From IMG/VR virus record IMGVR_UViG_3300024262_006558, positions 1 to 64,000 of that record: 64,000 bases of DNA. One strand, written 5' to 3'. Below, piece after piece: positions 12,498 through 20,546 of this stretch. The notes under the pieces are model-generated. The model saw only the letters and a list, made by a program, of their open reading frames with translations, ran no database searches and was not told the DNA's origin. Position 1 is the first letter of the stretch; every line of letters starts with the position of its first letter. Position numbers and translations under genes: made by a program.

Positions 12498-13490
12498 TTA
12501 AAATTCAGCGTCAAAATTAAAGTCGTTCTCACTATCTCTCTTTCCAGCTCTCTTATATTCAGCAACCCTCTTTTCAAAAAAGTTAGTTTTACCCTCTAAA
12601 GAAATCATATCCATAAAATCAAAAGGGTTAGGCGTGTTATACACTTTTTCGCAACGCAATTCATTTAGCCAGAAATCAGCAACAAACTCAATGTACTCAG
12701 ACATCAACTTTGAATTCATTCCTATTAAGGACACAGGGATTGATTCAGTTATGAACTCCTTCTCAATGTCTACGGCAGATACAATTATTTCAGTGATAGT
12801 CTTTTTATCCACTTTGTTAACCACGTGATCATTATGCAGTAAACATGCAAACTCACAATGCTTCCCTTCATCTCTTGAGATTAGCTCATTAGAGAAAGTA
12901 AGCCCAGGCATTAAACCTCTCTTTTTCAACCAGAACAATGCGCAGAAGCTACCAGAAAAGAAGATTCCTTCTACAGCGCAAAATGCAATCAATCTTTCTT
13001 GAAATGTTCCGTTATCAATCCATCTTAATGCCCAATCAGCTTTTTTCTTAACACAAGCTATTGTGTCAATAGCGTTAAATAGCCTATCTTTTTCAGCTTC
13101 ATCTTTAATGTAAGTGTCTATTAATAATGAATATGTCTCACTATGAACATTCTCCATCATAATTTGGAATCCGTAATAGAATTGAGCTTCAGCGTATTGA
13201 ACATCCGCTAGCATGTTGTTTGCTAGATTTTCGTTAACAATACCGTCTGATGCAGCAAAGAATGCGAGGATGTTTTTAATGAAATGCTTTTCATCATCAT
13301 TTAACTTATTATCCCAATCAGCTAAGTCTGGAGATAAATCTAACTCTTCAGCCGTCCATATCATTTCCTGAGTAACTTTATATTGATTCCAAATATCAGG
13401 ATGTTTTATGGGAAAAATAACATATCGATTAGGGTTATCAACCAATATAGGCTCTATTTCTTGCCCCTCTTTCTTTATATCTTCACTCAT
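12498..13490 (-). CDS. nrdB: Ribonucleotide reductase class Ia beta subunit
   Basis: [49 protein letters not shown] diiron and radical-transfer motifs. Confidence 0.97.
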
Positions 13491-13588: not shown

Positions 13589-13798
13589 TTAAAGTATTTC
13601 TGTAATATCTTTTTCCGAGACGTATCCTCGTTTCCCCACTATAAGGTAATTGTAGATACACCTACCAAATAACCTATCCACATAAGCTCCTGAATTTATC
13701 GTGCCTAAATTTGTAATAGTACCTTCTCCTAGTGGGTGGGTTATTCCATTAACCACCTTTACTTTATGCCCTCTATCAATAGCTTTTTGATCCTTCAT
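13589..13798 (-). CDS. Hypothetical protein
   Basis: 69-aa ORF between nrdA and nrdB. Confidence 0.55.
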   Translation of the reverse strand: MKDQKAIDRGHKVKVVNGITHPLGEGTITNLGTINSGAYVDRLFGRCIYNYLIVGKRGYVSEKDITEIL

Positions 13799-13815
13799 AT
13801 TCTTGTGTTCTTGGT

Positions 13816-14079
13816 CTATGAGGTGATTTTAGGTACAATTACTGAGCATTTATCCGAATTGACAACGAATCCACAAGTATCAAGTTCTGGATTATCTTCC
13901 CTATAATCCTCAATCTCTTTATGGCCTTTTTTATTGGTTTTTATCACATCTTTATATAAGACTGTAAACGTCTTCTTACCGCCAATCTCACTAACTCTAC
14001 CAATTACTGGTTGAGATGGAGAGTGCATAAAAAACACTTTTGTTCCAACATTTATTTCTACTCCATTAAAATCTTTCAT
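13816..14079 (-). CDS. Hypothetical protein
   Basis: 87-aa ORF; MKDFNGVEINVG start typical of small phage SH3-like proteins. Confidence 0.65.
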   Translation of the reverse strand: MKDFNGVEINVGTKVFFMHSPSQPVIGRVSEIGGKKTFTVLYKDVIKTNKKGHKEIEDYREDNPELDTCGFVVNSDKCSVIVPKITS

Positions 14080-14090
14080 AATAAATAAAT

Positions 14091-14393
14091 TTAAACTTCA
14101 TGTATAATATATGAACCTTCCTCGATGTGCCCATCATGCAACAAAGTTAGCAATACTTCATATATGCCGCTGACATTGCTATAGTTTCCAGAAGCAATCT
14201 CTTTTGATAACTCTTCTTTATGTTTATATGAGTGAACATCTTCTTTTACAATATCCTCACTTACGGTACCATCTCCATCCCCCTCTTCAATTAGGGACAC
14301 AGATAAATCTCCACCATAAGTTTTGTTCACAAACGACTCAAGCGCATGTGATGATGTTTCTAAAATTACTTTTTTGTTAAATACACTTTCCAT
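14091..14393 (-). CDS. Hypothetical protein
   Basis: 100-aa acidic ORF. Confidence 0.6.
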   Translation of the reverse strand: MESVFNKKVILETSSHALESFVNKTYGGDLSVSLIEEGDGDGTVSEDIVKEDVHSYKHKEELSKEIASGNYSNVSGIYEVLLTLLHDGHIEEGSYIIHEV

Positions 14394-14461: not shown

Positions 14462-14493
14462 AAAAAAAAACCATACTATTAATAATAGTATGG
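14462..14493 (-). terminator. Intrinsic terminator after nrdA
   Basis: CCATACTATT-AAT-AATAGTATGG stem plus T9 on minus strand. Confidence 0.75.
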
Positions 14494-14525: not shown

Positions 14526-17066
14526 CTACGAGCCGCATGCTTCGCAATCTTCCCCATTTTGCATTGCCTCGATGGAACAACTTATTGCCTCCTCTTCAGT
14601 ATAAACCTTAGCTTCAACCTTCTTAGTGTCAACTGTGAATTTAACCGCATCAGCTGCAGCTTTCGTCCTTAAGTAATACATTCCAGTCTTCAAAGCACTC
14701 TCTGGAGTCTTGCCATACTTGGCTTTGTTTTCCAAAAGACTTTTTTGTTTTACAATATCTCCAGATAACTCACCTTCTATTTTAGAAATTTCTTCTAAGA
14801 ACAGATCTAATTCTTCCTGAGCTCCTTCTGATACTGTTACTCCCCCTCCCCATCCAAAGAAATGCATGGCAGTTAAACTACCAAAATTTGGTTGAGCCAT
14901 GTGAATATTCATTGACTGAGTTTGATCTATATAAGCTCCTCTTCCAGCGTACATGTTGATGATGTCCTTTTGAGAAATCTCCCAAGTAGTTCTATACTTG
15001 TGTTTTAGATTTTCAGGGATTTCATCGATAGCTTGAACGCTACCATTATTAGACATTATCTGACTTTTAATCCCATTACTCCATATGCCAAGATCACACA
15101 ACTCTCTAACCAAGTGTTTGTTAACAATGATGAACTCACCGCTTAAAACTCGTCTTAAATACATATTGCTTTGCTGAGCTTCAGCTGCAGCTTCATTTCC
15201 AAATATACTAGCTGTAGAAGCGGTAGGCATTGAACATGTTGTTAAAGAGTTTCTTAGACCGTATTTTATTATGTCCGCTCTTAACCCTTCCCAATCATAC
15301 CTATCAGATGGAGTTACTCCCCACATGTCAAATTGTAATATGCCTTCAGATGCTGGAGATCCTTTGAATGTGCTGTATGACCCTTCTTTCTTAGCAAGAT
15401 CATTAGACGCTTTTAAAGAAGCGTAATATATTGTTTCGTATATTTTCTTATTCAAATCTGCAGACTTAGCGTCACCATATGACATATCCATTAAAAAGAA
15501 TACATCAGCTAAACCTTGAGTTCCTAAACCGATTGGTCTATGCTTAAAGTTTGAATTACTTGCAGTCTCTACAGGGTAGAAATTAATATCAATAACTTTA
15601 TTCAAGTTTATTGTCGCTCTATAAGATACTTGCTCTAATTTTTCGAAGTCAAACTTCTTATTTTTTCTACCTTTAACAAAATTAGGAAGACAAATACTAG
15701 CAAGATTACAAACGGCAGTTTCTTCTGGAGATGTAAATTCAATTATCTCAGCACATAAATTTGAACACTTGATTGTACCTAGATTCTTTTGGTTTGACTT
15801 AACGTTACACGCATCTTTATAAAGCATATAAGGGCCGCCAGTCTCCATTTGAGACTCTAACATTTTAGTCCAAAGCTCTCTAGCTTTAATCTTTCTAATG
15901 TACTTACCTTCAGCTTCATATTTTTCATACAACTCAACAAACTTTTCAGAATAAACCTCATCTAAACCAGGGCATTCTTTAGGGTCCATTAAAGCCCAGT
16001 CTTGATCGTTCTCCACTCTTTGCATGAACAAGTCAGGTAACCACATTGCATAGAACAAATCTCTTGCTCTCATTTCTTCTTTACCATGATTTTTCTTCAT
16101 TTCCAATAAATCGAAAATATCTCCATGCCATGGCTCTATATAAATAGCAATTGACCCTTTTCTCTTGCCTCCACCTTGATCTACATATCTAGCAGTCTCA
16201 TTGAACACCTTAAGCATAGGTACAATTCCATTCGAAGTCCCGTTAGTCCCTTTTATGTAAGACCCTTTAGTTCTTATATTGTGTATACTTAAGCCTATAC
16301 CTCCAGCCGATTGAGAAATGTCTGCGCATTCAGATAAGGTATCGTAAATACCTTTTATTGAATCATCCTTTGCTTGAAGTAAAAAACAGCTAGACATCTG
16401 AGGCTTATTGGTTCCAGCGTTGAATAATGTTGGGGTAGCATGTGTGAAATACTTTTCAGTCATCATGTCGTAAGTCTCCAGAGCGCTCTCTATGTCGTTT
16501 CCATGAATGCCTATAGCAACTCTCATGAATACATATTGAGGGGTCTCAGTAATTTCTAGAGCTTTCTTCTTCTCATTATATGTTTTAAGTAAATAGCTCT
16601 TCTCAAGAGTCTTGTACCCGAATATATCAAAAGTAAAATCTCTTGACTTTATGATTGCAGAATTTAATTCGTCCGAGTTTTCTACTACTGTTTTATAATA
16701 TTCTTCAGATACTAGTGGAGCTCTTTCTCCAGTTTCTGGATCAATGTTGTTGTAAAGTTTGTCAGTTGCTTTTGAGAAACTTCTTTCAGTTGTCTTGTGT
16801 AAAGATGATATCGCTAACCTTCCAGCTAACACCGCGTAATCAGGGTGTTGTGCAGTAAGAGCAGCCGCAGTCTCTACAGCTAAATTATCTAATGCTTCAG
16901 TAGTTACTCCATCGTAAATACCTTCAATAACTTTCTTGGCAATATCAAAAGGCTTTATCCAACTTGGATCCAACTTATAAGATTGCTTTTCTATTCTAGA
17001 AAGAACCTTTTCCAATTTCACAGGCTCTTTCTTTCCAGTCCTTTTAGTTACATAAACTTCGTTCAT
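14526..17066 (-). CDS. nrdA: Ribonucleotide reductase class Ia alpha subunit with N-terminal ATP cone
   Basis: VTKRTG ATP cone, ATPTLFNAG, SSCFL, SNLCAEI, MPTAST, KTGMYYLRT, C-terminal CEAC. Confidence 0.97.
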   Translation of the reverse strand: MNEVYVTKRTGKKEPVKLEKVLSRIEKQSYKLDPSWIKPFDIAKKVIEGIYDGVTTEALDNLAVETAAALTAQHPDYAVLAGRLAISSLHKTTERSFSKATDKLYNNIDPETGERAPLVSEEYYKTVVENSDELNSAIIKSRDFTFDIFGYKTLEKSYLLKTYNEKKKALEITETPQYVFMRVAIGIHGNDIESALETYDMMTEKYFTHATPTLFNAGTNKPQMSSCFLLQAKDDSIKGIYDTLSECADISQSAGGIGLSIHNIRTKGSYIKGTNGTSNGIVPMLKVFNETARYVDQGGGKRKGSIAIYIEPWHGDIFDLLEMKKNHGKEEMRARDLFYAMWLPDLFMQRVENDQDWALMDPKECPGLDEVYSEKFVELYEKYEAEGKYIRKIKARELWTKMLESQMETGGPYMLYKDACNVKSNQKNLGTIKCSNLCAEIIEFTSPEETAVCNLASICLPNFVKGRKNKKFDFEKLEQVSYRATINLNKVIDINFYPVETASNSNFKHRPIGLGTQGLADVFFLMDMSYGDAKSADLNKKIYETIYYASLKASNDLAKKEGSYSTFKGSPASEGILQFDMWGVTPSDRYDWEGLRADIIKYGLRNSLTTCSMPTASTASIFGNEAAAEAQQSNMYLRRVLSGEFIIVNKHLVRELCDLGIWSNGIKSQIMSNNGSVQAIDEIPENLKHKYRTTWEISQKDIINMYAGRGAYIDQTQSMNIHMAQPNFGSLTAMHFFGWGGGVTVSEGAQEELDLFLEEISKIEGELSGDIVKQKSLLENKAKYGKTPESALKTGMYYLRTKAAADAVKFTVDTKKVEAKVYTEEEAISCSIEAMQNGEDCEACGS

Positions 17067-17094
17067 TTGTTGTTTTTTTTGTTAATTAAATATT

Positions 17095-17682
17095 TTATAA
17101 AATGCATGAAAGTAATAAGTCCTTATTGCAAGATTTCATGTGGTAATCTCTTACAACATGATCAACGTCATATTTCCAAGTATGTAGAGATTGTCTCAAT
17201 ATATAATACTGAACTCTCTCTACTGTTTTATCACCTACCATCCCAAGCTCTTTCGAGATCTTCTTGAAGGTTTTTAAATCATAATTGAAATCTCTATCTC
17301 CAACTATACAGTTGTCTAGAGACGTCTTGTTCTCTTTGATGAATTCATACACTTCATCACTAATTTTATTGTTGTCATGCAACAATTTCATACTAGAGGA
17401 AAATTTACTCCTAGTATCTTTGTGTAAATTTGACACTGCAACTCTCGCTGCAAGCGCTTCTATTTGCTTATTCTCGTCAATATTTTCTTCTAAAACCTGA
17501 AGCAATATATCATCGATTTTTCTTGTGGTAATATTTTCATAACATTTGCCTAAAACTTTTCCTGATATCATCTGAATGATCTCATCCTCTATATCAAGTC
17601 CTGGTGTCATTTTCTCAATTCTTTTAGAGATTTTCCCTAAATTTATACTCTCTTTTTTACCACTCTTTTTTACCACAAACAT
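17095..17682 (-). CDS. Stand-alone ATP-cone/NrdA N-terminal-domain paralogue
   Basis: Aligns by eye to the first ~210 aa of the adjacent NrdA (VVKKSGKKE, LAARVAVSNLHK, RDFNYD, ERVQY); has no catalytic barrel. Confidence 0.85.
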   Translation of the reverse strand: MFVVKKSGKKESINLGKISKRIEKMTPGLDIEDEIIQMISGKVLGKCYENITTRKIDDILLQVLEENIDENKQIEALAARVAVSNLHKDTRSKFSSSMKLLHDNNKISDEVYEFIKENKTSLDNCIVGDRDFNYDLKTFKKISKELGMVGDKTVERVQYYILRQSLHTWKYDVDHVVRDYHMKSCNKDLLLSCIL

Positions 17683-17823
17683 GCTAGAAAACCTTTAAAT
17701 TTACCTATTTACCACTTTTTTGAGACAAAGATTCCCTAGAGCAATTTTTGATCGCCCTTAAATTCGTTTAAAATTTAATCAGGGAGTGTTTACAGCGAAG
17801 TTATATTTTTCTTCTGTTTTTGA

Positions 17824-19375: not shown

Positions 19376-20419
19376 TTACTTATTTGATTCTTTTGTATAC
19401 TCCGCTTCTTGAGACTTTAGCCTGTAGAAAGGGGAAAGAAAATTATCCACGTTAATCCTCTCAGCTTCCATCATATTTAGGAATCCTTGTTTTTTCATGC
19501 CCAAAACAGCGCGACTAATACTTCTATCATCATCTATTGGCTCATTTAACATTTGAGTAACATCATTTATTGCTATTTTAGAAATAAATGGCTTTTTCAA
19601 ATTCATAAGTTTAGCATTTCTATACAAAACCTCTTCAGCCTCAATTATCTTGTCTAAAGTTTTAGACTTTTTGTATTTCTTCTCCTTTTTTAGCTCAAGG
19701 CACTCATGCTTTATTTCTTTATAAGTGTATTTTCTGTCAATTATATCTGGAAAGAATTTTATTAGAGTATTTCTAGTAACCCCTTTCACTCCAGCAATAT
19801 TATCTGATGTATCACCCTCGAAACACTTAAACATTAACTCATTTTCTAGAGTATGACCCATTTTTTGCTTAAAGTTATCTTTAGTAATCAATCCAATACT
19901 GTCAGGATTCATAACGGATACTAATTCAGAAATAAGTTGATAATAGTCTTTGTCTCTGCTAAAAATTATGATCTCTTCCTCTAGACCCAACTCTTCACTC
20001 ATTATACAGTACTGAGCTATTAAATCATCTCCCTCAATATAATCAGCTTCAATCTGTCTTATGTACAAGTCTTCTATTATGTTCTTAGCTCTAATTTTTT
20101 GCATTAAAACCTCGTACCGCTCTTTGCTTTCAGGGTCATTCATCCCCTCTTCTATAATTGCGCACTCTTCAATGTCCCAATCCTTCTTACGATTTGCTTT
20201 ATAAGGTTTATATAGTTCGTATCTCAGCTTTCCAGACTTTATTCCATCCCAGCAACATACGACCCTGTTAGGCAGTACTTTGCGAACAGCAGTAGAAAGG
20301 CTTATTAAAAATCCATACGTCCCACTACACCTCTCTCCATACGCGTCTAGCGCTGTTGACCTGTGGTGATTACGCTTAAGGTTCCAATTACCATCTATTA
20401 GGAAAGTTTTTCTTGGCAT
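19376..20419 (-). CDS. 5'-3' exonuclease / T4 RNase H-like flap nuclease
   Basis: Likely start MPRKTFLIDG at 20419; CWDG, YKANR, IEGDDLIA, SRDKDYYQL, GDTSDNIAGVKG. Confidence 0.9.
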   Translation of the reverse strand: MPRKTFLIDGNWNLKRNHHRSTALDAYGERCSGTYGFLISLSTAVRKVLPNRVVCCWDGIKSGKLRYELYKPYKANRKKDWDIEECAIIEEGMNDPESKERYEVLMQKIRAKNIIEDLYIRQIEADYIEGDDLIAQYCIMSEELGLEEEIIIFSRDKDYYQLISELVSVMNPDSIGLITKDNFKQKMGHTLENELMFKCFEGDTSDNIAGVKGVTRNTLIKFFPDIIDRKYTYKEIKHECLELKKEKKYKKSKTLDKIIEAEEVLYRNAKLMNLKKPFISKIAINDVTQMLNEPIDDDRSISRAVLGMKKQGFLNMMEAERINVDNFLSPFYRLKSQEAEYTKESNK

Positions 20420-20440
20420 AACTATTTTTCTTCTTAACAA

Positions 20441-20448
20441 CAAATATA
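20441..20448 (-). promoter_or_regulatory. -7 element TATATTTG
   Basis: 21 nt upstream of ATG 20419. Confidence 0.55.
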
Positions 20449-20482
20449 TAGTATTGAGTTTAAAAAAGCACTTAAAAGGGGG

Positions 20483-20512
20483 AAAAAAAAACCTCCCATA
20501 AGGAGGTTTTTT
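20483..20512. terminator. Intrinsic terminator after recA
   Basis: A9-CCTCC-CATAA-GGAGG-T6. Confidence 0.8.
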
Positions 20513-20546
20513 ATATTCACACAACAATAAAATGTATTACATCTTA

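What the first reader, a model, noticed from the sequence alone, without database searches (positions are those of the whole stretch)
17095..17682. Stand-alone ATP-cone/N-domain copy of NrdA directly upstream of nrdA: possible RNR allostery decoy
The 195-aa ORF is collinear with the first ~210 aa of the neighbouring NrdA (ATP cone plus N-terminal helical domain) and stops just before ATPTLFNAG, so it has no catalytic cysteines. It is divergent but intact, which argues for selection. In class Ia RNRs, dATP binding to the ATP cone drives inhibitory oligomers. A free cone domain could soak up dATP or cap these oligomers and keep host or phage RNR active, which might also counter dNTP-depleting defences. 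It lacks the NrdR zinc ribbon, so it is not NrdR.
Basis: partly seen in the sequence, partly recalled or inferred. Interest (0 to 1): 0.68.

Follow-up and report, generated by a model that had tools for sequence, protein, structure and literature searches.

The report
Stand-alone RNR regulatory domain in jumbo phage
A jumbo phage carries, just upstream of its ribonucleotide reductase gene, a separate small gene that copies only the enzyme's ATP/dATP-sensing front end; selection has kept it in four related phages, even where the reductase itself was swapped for another type, so it probably acts as a free regulatory module for DNA-precursor supply.

Summary
ORF 17095-17682(-) encodes 195 aa collinear with the first ~210 aa of the adjacent NrdA (27% identity, E 1e-22). 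It has a Pfam ATP-cone hit, ends at the N-domain/barrel boundary, and has no barrel and no NrdR zinc ribbon.

It is a real gene, not a decaying copy. Four orthologues of 195-198 aa (45-69% identity, no internal indels, shared C-terminal tail) each sit 18-28 nt upstream of a full-length nrdA in syntenic jumbo-phage contigs. dN/dS is at most 0.06-0.26 with dS saturated. Neutral drift at the observed divergence left the ORF open in 0 of 20,000 simulations. It evolves about 3.4 times faster than the same domain inside NrdA.

In one relative the neighbouring nrdA is a different subclass (29% identity), yet the small gene is retained.

The AlphaFold2 model (pLDDT 94.5) superposes on the human RRM1 N-terminus (TM 0.85), and the core A-site positions (K5, K17, I18, R21, D57) are invariant.

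The mechanism is untested. The complex prediction with NrdA gave no verdict. None of 325 NrdA-bearing deposited phages has a second N-domain copy, and no paper found describes such a protein. I call it a new variant of the ATP-cone regulatory theme.

The parts
17095..17682 (-). Stand-alone gene, 195 aa plus stop (P0001): a paralogue of the RNR alpha N-terminal regulatory region
   Evidence: ORF list and translation. 27% identity to the NrdA N-terminus, E 1e-22. Four orthologues of 195-198 aa. dN/dS at most 0.06-0.26. AF2 pLDDT 94.5.
17407..17682 (-). ATP-cone domain, residues 1-92
   Evidence: Pfam PF03477 at 39.5 bits on residues 1-88. Ungapped alignment to human RRM1 residues 1-103. K5, G8, E11, K17, I18, R21 and D57 are invariant in the family.
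17134..17406 (-). Helical N-domain, residues 93-183, equivalent to the RNR all-alpha region but diverged below Pfam PF00317 detection
   Evidence: No PF00317 hit, yet Foldseek TM 0.85 to the human RRM1 N-terminus over ~197 columns. The conserved NrdA FGFKTLE motif is replaced at positions 137-143.
17098..17133 (-). Family-specific C-terminal tail, residues 184-195 (S-C-[ND]-x-x-L-[LV]-L-S-[CS]...), predicted helix 187-194
   Evidence: Conserved in all four members, while only 1 of 12 residues matches NrdA. Secondary structure.
17067..17094 (-). 28-nt A-rich spacer between the small gene and nrdA, with no terminator
   Evidence: Sequence and terminator scan. Spacers in relatives are 18-24 nt and the relative reading frames differ, so these are separate proteins, not a read-through fusion.
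14526..17066 (-). nrdA, full-length class Ia RNR alpha, 846 aa (P0002), with its own ATP-cone
   Evidence: Pfam ATP-cone, lgN and lgC hits, barrel E 8e-197. About 59-64% identical to Bacteroidota NrdA.
14471..14493 (-). Terminator-like hairpin plus T-run just after the nrdA stop
   Evidence: The prediction implies that the small gene and nrdA form one transcription unit.
17722..17736 (-). Conserved upstream block GGGAATCTTTGTCTC, about 40 nt before the start codon: a candidate promoter or regulatory element
   Evidence: Near-invariant in the upstream regions of the window, L019 and L012. Its function was not tested.
12498..13490 (-). nrdB, RNR small subunit, 330 aa, with no ATP-cone
   Evidence: Pfam PF00268, E 1e-104, and no other domain.

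Best explanation
This is a functional, separately translated gene that encodes only the allosteric front end of a class Ia ribonucleotide reductase alpha subunit: the ATP-cone plus the helical connector. It is co-transcribed with nrdA. It arose anciently, either by partial duplication of an nrdA of the eukaryote/Bacteroidota-like type or as the 5' part left when an nrdA cassette was inserted. It has since been kept as an independent protein. Shown: the gene is under purifying selection, folds like the RRM1 N-terminus, keeps the cone's conserved core positions, and survives replacement of the neighbouring nrdA. Inferred: it binds ATP/dATP in the cone and acts in trans as a nucleotide-sensing regulatory subunit. 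It would use cone-mediated contacts to alter the dATP feedback control of an RNR (the phage's or the host's), so that dNTP synthesis stays high during replication of a ~390-kb genome. The patches where conserved NrdA residues are replaced (HPDY 71-74, FGFKTLE 137-143, the tail) are read as adaptation of former intramolecular surfaces to life as a free protein or to a new partner.
For: It is a real gene. There are four orthologues of 195-198 aa with 45-69% identity, no internal indels and a shared tail. All lie 18-28 nt upstream of a full-length nrdA in the same exo-DnaB-cone-nrdA synteny.

Selection. For window versus L019, dN is 0.259 with dS saturated, so dN/dS is at most 0.06-0.15. For window versus L012, dN/dS is at most 0.26. 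Identity by codon position runs 2nd > 1st > 3rd. The ORF stayed open in 0 of 20,000 neutral simulations at 38% nucleotide divergence.

Fold. pLDDT 94.5 and pTM 0.88. The top Foldseek hits are the human RRM1 N-terminus, TM 0.85, rmsd 2.1-2.4.

Ligand site. Residues 1-103 align to hRRM1 without gaps. I18 and D57, which the literature names as key A-site residues (PMC9221315), are invariant, as are K5, G8, K17 and R21. 22 of 38 highly conserved NrdA N-domain columns are kept in all four members.

Operon. There is no terminator before nrdA, one after it, and a conserved upstream block.

Independence from the neighbour. In L012 the nrdA is a different subclass, yet the gene is retained.
Against: There is no direct evidence of nucleotide binding, of any protein partner, or of expression. 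The complex prediction with NrdA 1-760 gave no verdict. The protein evolves 3-3.4 times faster than DnaB or the NrdA N-domain, so constraint is relaxed or the selection is of another kind. Position 88, a near-universal Lys, is Ser in one member, and position 6 (Arg) is Lys in two. The nrdA subclass swap argues against a tightly co-evolved interface with the adjacent enzyme. Only four sequences are known, and three come from short contigs.
Confidence: 0.45

Rival explanations
1. The target is a host protein rather than the phage's own NrdA. The free cone/N-domain mimics the host's Bacteroidota-type NrdA front end and engages host RNR oligomers. Alternatively it engages another cone-bearing host regulator such as NrdR, reprogramming host dNTP synthesis or nrd gene repression.
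For: The gene is kept when the phage nrdA is swapped for a different subclass. It resembles the eukaryote/Bacteroidota-type N-domain (E 2e-23) far more than the E. coli-type neighbour in L012 (E 0.005). The phage NrdA is ~59-64% identical to Bacteroidota NrdA, which suggests a Bacteroidota host with the same enzyme type. Fast evolution is typical of host-interaction proteins (general knowledge).
Against: The host is unknown and no host protein was tested. Tight linkage and probable co-transcription with phage nrdA point as readily to the phage enzyme. Whether the host has NrdR is unknown.
Confidence: 0.25
2. It is a neofunctionalised nucleotide sensor or buffer whose role is unrelated to RNR catalysis. 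For example, it could bind dATP/ATP or a related nucleotide to regulate another phage process, or to blunt a nucleotide-based or dNTP-depleting host defence.
For: The cone pocket positions are conserved. The helical half has diverged below Pfam detection and lost conserved NrdA motifs. Retention is independent of the NrdA subclass.
Against: A stoichiometric sponge for an abundant metabolite such as dATP is inefficient (inference). Invariant linkage to nrdA in all four genomes suggests an RNR-related role. The protein was not scanned against the PADLOC defence library, and no defence or anti-defence family was identified for it.
Confidence: 0.15
3. It is a non-functional remnant: a decaying partial duplicate, or the 5' stump left by replacement of an nrdA cassette, open only by chance.
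For: Its position and collinearity with nrdA. Cassette replacement does occur at this very site. Its rate is 3-3.4 times that of its neighbours.
Against: The ORF is open and free of internal indels in four lineages at 31-55% amino-acid divergence. It survived in 0 of 20,000 neutral simulations. dN is much lower than dS and the second codon position is the most conserved. Core fold and ligand positions are invariant. The AF2 model is confident.
Confidence: 0.05
4. It is a cis-acting leader ORF: its translation, not its product, matters, for example through translational coupling or mRNA stabilisation for nrdA expression.
For: The 18-28-nt spacer and the absence of a terminator before nrdA.
Against: Conservation is at the amino-acid level and has structure: ligand and core positions are invariant and there is a family-specific tail. 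At 195 codons it is far longer than known leader ORFs. The frame relation to nrdA varies between relatives.
Confidence: 0.05

Closest known systems
N-terminal region (ATP-cone plus all-alpha domain) of eukaryote-type class Ia RNR alpha, e.g. human RRM1 and yeast Rnr1
   Same: Same fold (TM 0.85). Best sequence match in the PDB (E 6e-31). Ungapped over residues 1-103, with K5, K17, I18, R21 and D57 conserved.
   Different: It is a free 195-aa protein with no catalytic barrel, specificity site or C-terminal redox tail. It lacks a ~10-residue loop, has lost the HPDY and FGFKTLE motifs, and has its own C-terminal tail.
NrdR (zinc ribbon plus ATP-cone repressor of nrd genes)
   Same: A small protein whose function rests on an ATP-cone separate from the RNR polypeptide, and which is linked to dNTP homeostasis.
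   Different: It has no zinc ribbon or DNA-binding part. It carries the RNR helical N-domain instead. Its sequence is closest to NrdA cones, not NrdR.
ATP-cones fused to the radical-generating subunit NrdB (Leeuwenhoekiella blandensis class Id; PMC5794259)
   Same: It shows that the cone is a portable regulatory module that can act from a polypeptide other than alpha, and it occurs in Bacteroidota-associated systems.
   Different: There the cone is fused to NrdB and alpha lacks a cone. Here the module is unfused, NrdB has no cone, and alpha keeps its own.
Multiple tandem ATP-cones in NrdAz-type alpha subunits (e.g. Pseudomonas aeruginosa), discussed in PMC9669993
   Same: Duplication of the regulatory front end followed by divergence of one copy.
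   Different: Those are in-frame tandem cones within one polypeptide. Here the copy includes the helical domain and is a separate gene.
Split nrdA genes in phages (interrupted by introns, inteins or homing endonucleases)
   Same: A short ORF encoding the NrdA N-terminus lies next to more nrdA sequence.
   Different: The downstream gene is a complete NrdA with its own cone and N-domain, and there is only one barrel in the genome. The short ORF is therefore not a piece of a split enzyme.

Membership tests
ATP-cone domain proteins (Pfam PF03477) | Profile match above the curated cut-off | tested here: met
   39.5 bits against a 25.8 cut-off for P0001. The other three members score 32.7-40 bits.
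ATP-cone domain proteins (Pfam PF03477) | Conserved nucleotide-pocket residues (hRRM1 numbering: K5, R6, K17, I18, R21, D57, K88) | tested here: met
   K5, K17, I18, R21 and D57 are invariant. Position 6 is K/K/R/R and position 88 is K/R/R/S. The importance of I18 and D57 is taken from PMC9221315.
ATP-cone domain proteins (Pfam PF03477) | Actual binding of ATP/dATP | not testable with these tools
   Needs ITC, thermal shift or a structure with ligand.
Class Ia ribonucleotide reductase alpha (NrdA) | Ten-stranded barrel with catalytic cysteines (PF02867) | tested here: not met
   P0001 has no PF02867 hit. The only barrel in the genome is in the neighbour.
Class Ia ribonucleotide reductase alpha (NrdA) | All-alpha N-domain (PF00317) | tested here: inconclusive
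   No Pfam hit at E<=1. The predicted structure nevertheless superposes on this region of RRM1, and BLASTP aligns it to the NrdA region that bears PF00317.
NrdR | N-terminal zinc ribbon (two CxxC pairs) before the cone | tested here: not met
   The cone beta-hairpin starts at residue 2. No N-terminal cysteines and no other Pfam domain.
Split or fractured nrdA | A complementary downstream part that lacks the N-terminal region | tested here: not met
   The downstream NrdA has its own cone, lgN and barrel. The genome has exactly two cones and one barrel.
NrdB-fused ATP-cone | Cone in the same polypeptide as the ferritin-like beta subunit | tested here: not met
   It is a separate ORF. The 330-aa NrdB has only PF00268.

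The most novel reading that the evidence does not exclude
The protein is a diffusible, trans-acting ATP-cone module. A phage would use it to rewire the dATP feedback switch of ribonucleotide reductase, most provocatively that of the host enzyme or of a host cone-bearing regulator. It would do so by joining or capping cone-mediated oligomers, keeping dNTP synthesis on during infection. This would be the first case of RNR allostery being manipulated by a separate mimic of the enzyme's own regulatory domain. Similar stand-alone forms in other large viruses could make it a recurrent strategy.
Probability: 0.2. Interest if true: 0.8.

Novelty: new variant of a known kind. Interest (0 to 1): 0.6.

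Why it matters
ATP-cones are the master on/off switch of dNTP synthesis. So far they are known fused to RNR subunits or to the NrdR repressor. A free, selected copy of the whole regulatory front end, kept next to nrdA in jumbo phages even when the enzyme is exchanged, suggests that the switch can be supplied or subverted in trans. If true, it gives a simple system of one small protein for dissecting cone-driven oligomerisation. It would also be a new route by which viruses control nucleotide pools, with possible links to dNTP-depletion defences. The practical test is cheap: express 195 aa and measure nucleotide binding and the effect on RNR.

Tried and rejected
1. Complex prediction of P0001 with NrdA 1-760, using my own alignments: score 0.00, controls not run, no verdict. 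It is not evidence either way.

I did not pursue it, so expression is untested.

3. Scans of viral contigs and metagenome contigs with the protein alignment returned only the same phage from other samples. Megablast against deposited phages found nothing.

4. DNA for the 69% relative (P0003) was unavailable, so dN/dS used the 59% and 45% relatives, where dS is saturated. The ratios are upper bounds only.

5. A 'broader clade' of stand-alone proteins (P0163, P0125, P0148, P0183, P0242) grouped with the family at SH-aLRT 89. I do not rely on it. The AU test shows that the alternative placement with the phage NrdA clade is as good or better (lnL +7.6, p-AU 0.59), so the grouping is probably long-branch attraction.

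6. I considered that those other short proteins are exon 1 of eukaryotic RNR1 genes. I rejected this for L018, L013 and L014, because the downstream ORFs are unrelated genes. Their taxonomic origin remains uncertain.

7. Read-through or frameshift fusion with nrdA is rejected. The frame offset differs among relatives (+1, 0, +2), and stops lie in the spacer.

8. More distant phage contigs with the same NrdA type (P0005, P0007; LR756504 and LR756502) have no upstream cone ORF.

Full report
**Observation.** The minus strand of the window carries an ATG-started ORF at 17095-17682, 195 aa (P0001). It lies 28 nt upstream of a full-length nrdA at 14526-17066, 846 aa (P0002). BLASTP aligns residues 1-195 of the small protein with residues 4-229 of NrdA at 27% identity, E 1e-22. 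Pfam finds an ATP-cone in residues 1-88 above the curated cut-off. PHROG families of RNR large subunits match residues 2-177. The ORF ends 11 residues after the conserved Y-x-x-x-S motif, where NrdA goes on with FTHATPTLFNAG. It has no barrel domain and no zinc ribbon.

**Genome context.** The window is the first 64 kb of a 388.6-kb IMG/VR virus record. The same sequence sits in a 494-kb JGI contig and in other samples. Neighbouring genes are replication genes: PolA, a RecA-like protein, a 5'-3' exonuclease and a DnaB-like helicase. Downstream of nrdA come three small ORFs and then nrdB. The genome has exactly two ATP-cones and one RNR barrel. The small ORF is therefore not half of a second, split RNR. 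A terminator-like hairpin follows nrdA and none separates the two genes. NrdA is ~59-64% identical to Bacteroidota NrdA, which suggests, but does not prove, a Bacteroidota host.

**Is it a gene?** Word and exhaustive profile searches found three orthologues:
- P0003: 198 aa, 69% identity.
- P0274: 198 aa, 59% identity.
- P0123: 198 aa, 45% identity.

Only P0001 and P0123 reach E<1e-30 among 1.84 billion cluster representatives. The family is therefore small and distinct from ordinary NrdA N-termini. All four genes lie 18-28 nt upstream of a full-length nrdA. The two relatives with enough flanking sequence (the P0003 contig and L012) share the exonuclease-DnaB-cone-nrdA order; the L019 contig is too short to show it. 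The four proteins align without internal gaps and share a family-specific C-terminal tail.

Selection tests gave these results:

| Comparison | Cone ORF | Reference gene |
|---|---|---|
| Window vs L019 | dN 0.259, dN/dS at most 0.06-0.15 (dS saturated) | NrdA residues 1-215: dN 0.076 |
| Window vs L012 | dN 0.41, dN/dS at most 0.26 | DnaB: dN 0.13 |

Identity by codon position runs second > first > third. When the gene was mutated at random to the observed 38% nucleotide divergence, the frame stayed open in 0 of 20,000 trials. The gene does evolve about three times faster than its neighbours.

**A swap of the neighbour.** In L012, DnaB is 82% and the exonuclease 76% identical to the window's. 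The nrdA after the small gene, however, is a complete 780-aa enzyme of a different subclass. It is 29% identical to the window's NrdA and carries an E. coli-like PTPIMCGVRTPNRQYSSC motif. The small protein there matches its own neighbour's cone only weakly (E 0.005). It matches the window-type NrdA N-terminus at E 2e-23. So nrdA was exchanged in one lineage while the small gene was kept. This is independent evidence of function. It also argues against an interface tightly co-evolved with one particular phage NrdA.

**Origin.** In trees of N-domains the family is a strongly supported clade (SH-aLRT 99-100) on a long stem. The free search placed it with other short proteins. A tree that holds it together with the window-type phage NrdA clade is not rejected and is slightly better (lnL +7.6, p-AU 0.59). 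An ancient partial duplication of the lineage's own nrdA fits the data. So does a 5' part left behind by a cassette insertion, the kind of event Burnim et al. propose for the relocation of cones to NrdB (PMC9669993). The exact donor is unresolved.

**Structure and ligand site.** AlphaFold2 with a 52-row alignment gives pLDDT 94.5 and pTM 0.88. Foldseek's best hits are the N-terminal region of human RRM1 (TM 0.85, rmsd 2.1-2.4 Å), ahead of E. coli NrdA. A profile search of PDB sequences agrees: human RRM1 at E 6e-31 against E. coli at 6e-7. The alignment to RRM1 is ungapped over residues 1-103, so numbering is shared. I18 is named as the basis of dATP/ATP discrimination, and D57 as essential for the inhibited hexamer (PMC9221315). 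Both are invariant in the family, as are K5, G8, E11, K17 and R21.

Of 38 columns that are at least 85% conserved in 44 full-length NrdA N-domains, 22 are kept in all four members, 8 partly, and 8 are replaced. Most of the replacements fall in or near three patches: HPDY (71-74), FGFKTLE (137-143) and the tail. I infer that the cone can still bind adenine nucleotides. I also infer that the altered patches are former intramolecular surfaces adapted to a free protein or to a new partner. Neither inference was tested.

**Mechanism.** The best-supported reading is a trans-acting, nucleotide-sensing regulatory protein tied to dNTP synthesis. Whether it acts on the phage RNR, on the host RNR or regulator, or elsewhere is open. 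The single complex prediction, with NrdA 1-760, gave no verdict and counts neither way.

**How unusual is it?** Among 325 deposited phages with an NrdA N-domain match, each has exactly one copy. The closest phage NrdAs, in huge phages LR756504 and LR756502 and in contigs L009 and L011, have no upstream cone ORF. Literature searches found no description of a stand-alone NrdA N-terminal protein. Short 'ATP-cone/all-alpha' proteins do exist in metagenomic catalogues, in clusters of 51-99 members, mostly viral. A few complete stand-alone ORFs occur in unrelated contexts. Some catalogue entries may be fragments. I therefore rate this a new variant of the known ATP-cone regulatory theme rather than something categorically new.

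**Verdict.** The inference of selection is confirmed by test. The 'allostery decoy' mechanism is plausible but unproven, and the neighbour swap complicates it somewhat. Interest 0.6.

Noticed in passing
L012:4250-6592 (relative contig, Logan SRR10367864): The nrdA next to the small gene is an E. coli-like subclass, only 29% identical to the window's NrdA, while the flanking DnaB and exonuclease are 82% and 76% identical. This is a clean example of in-place replacement of an RNR cassette between closely related jumbo phages.
   Followed up: partly
window 13589-14393 (-): Three small ORFs (100, 87 and 69 aa; no significant Pfam hit, apart from a weak DUF7205 flag on the 87-aa one) lie between nrdA and nrdB. 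In the P0003 relative, nrdB follows nrdA directly, so this is an insertion or deletion inside the nrd operon.
   Followed up: no
L001:4980-9274 (LR756504.1) versus L002:4986-7538 (LR756502.1): The closest deposited NrdA (63% identity in the N-domain) is one 850-aa ORF in LR756502. In LR756504 it appears broken into ORFs of 405, 307 and 510 aa. This may be an intron, intein or homing-endonuclease interruption, or an assembly error.
   Followed up: no
L017:5279-6606 (JGI 3300071516, 282-kb contig): Two tandem stand-alone cone/N-domain ORFs (203 and 201 aa) are 100% identical over 199 aa, with an RNR small-subunit gene nearby. This is either a very recent tandem duplication or an assembly repeat.
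   Followed up: partly
L018:6001-9159 (NCBI GCA_001574975.1, KQ965928.1): A 230-aa stand-alone cone/N-domain ORF is followed not by the rest of an RNR gene but by zinc-ribbon ORFs. By my reading, untested, these resemble giant-virus late transcription factors. Cyclin and NUDIX genes are nearby, so this could be a viral insertion in a eukaryotic genome.
   Followed up: no
L013:611-1564 and L014:154-1176: Two related stand-alone cone/N-domain proteins (P0148 and P0183, 205 and 201 aa) are each followed by an Hpt (histidine phosphotransfer) gene. This is a second, unrelated conserved context for such proteins.
   Followed up: no
window 17722-17736 (-): The block GGGAATCTTTGTCTC, about 40 nt upstream of the start codon, is nearly invariant in the window, L019 and L012, while the surrounding intergenic sequence varies. 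It is a candidate phage promoter or operator. I did not search for it elsewhere in the genome.
   Followed up: partly
window 1-64000: GC skew is negative in every 2-kb bin from about 4 kb onward, and all the genes examined, across 8.4-23.7 kb, are on the minus strand. IMG/VR labels the 388.6-kb record a 'provirus' inside a 494-kb contig, although the gene content seen here is that of a lytic-type jumbo phage replication module.
   Followed up: no
window 19376-20527 (-): The listed 383-aa ORF for the 5'-3' exonuclease starts at a TTG. Gene calls on identical contigs (347 aa) and in relatives (343-353 aa) start at an internal ATG, so the long form is probably over-extended.
   Followed up: no
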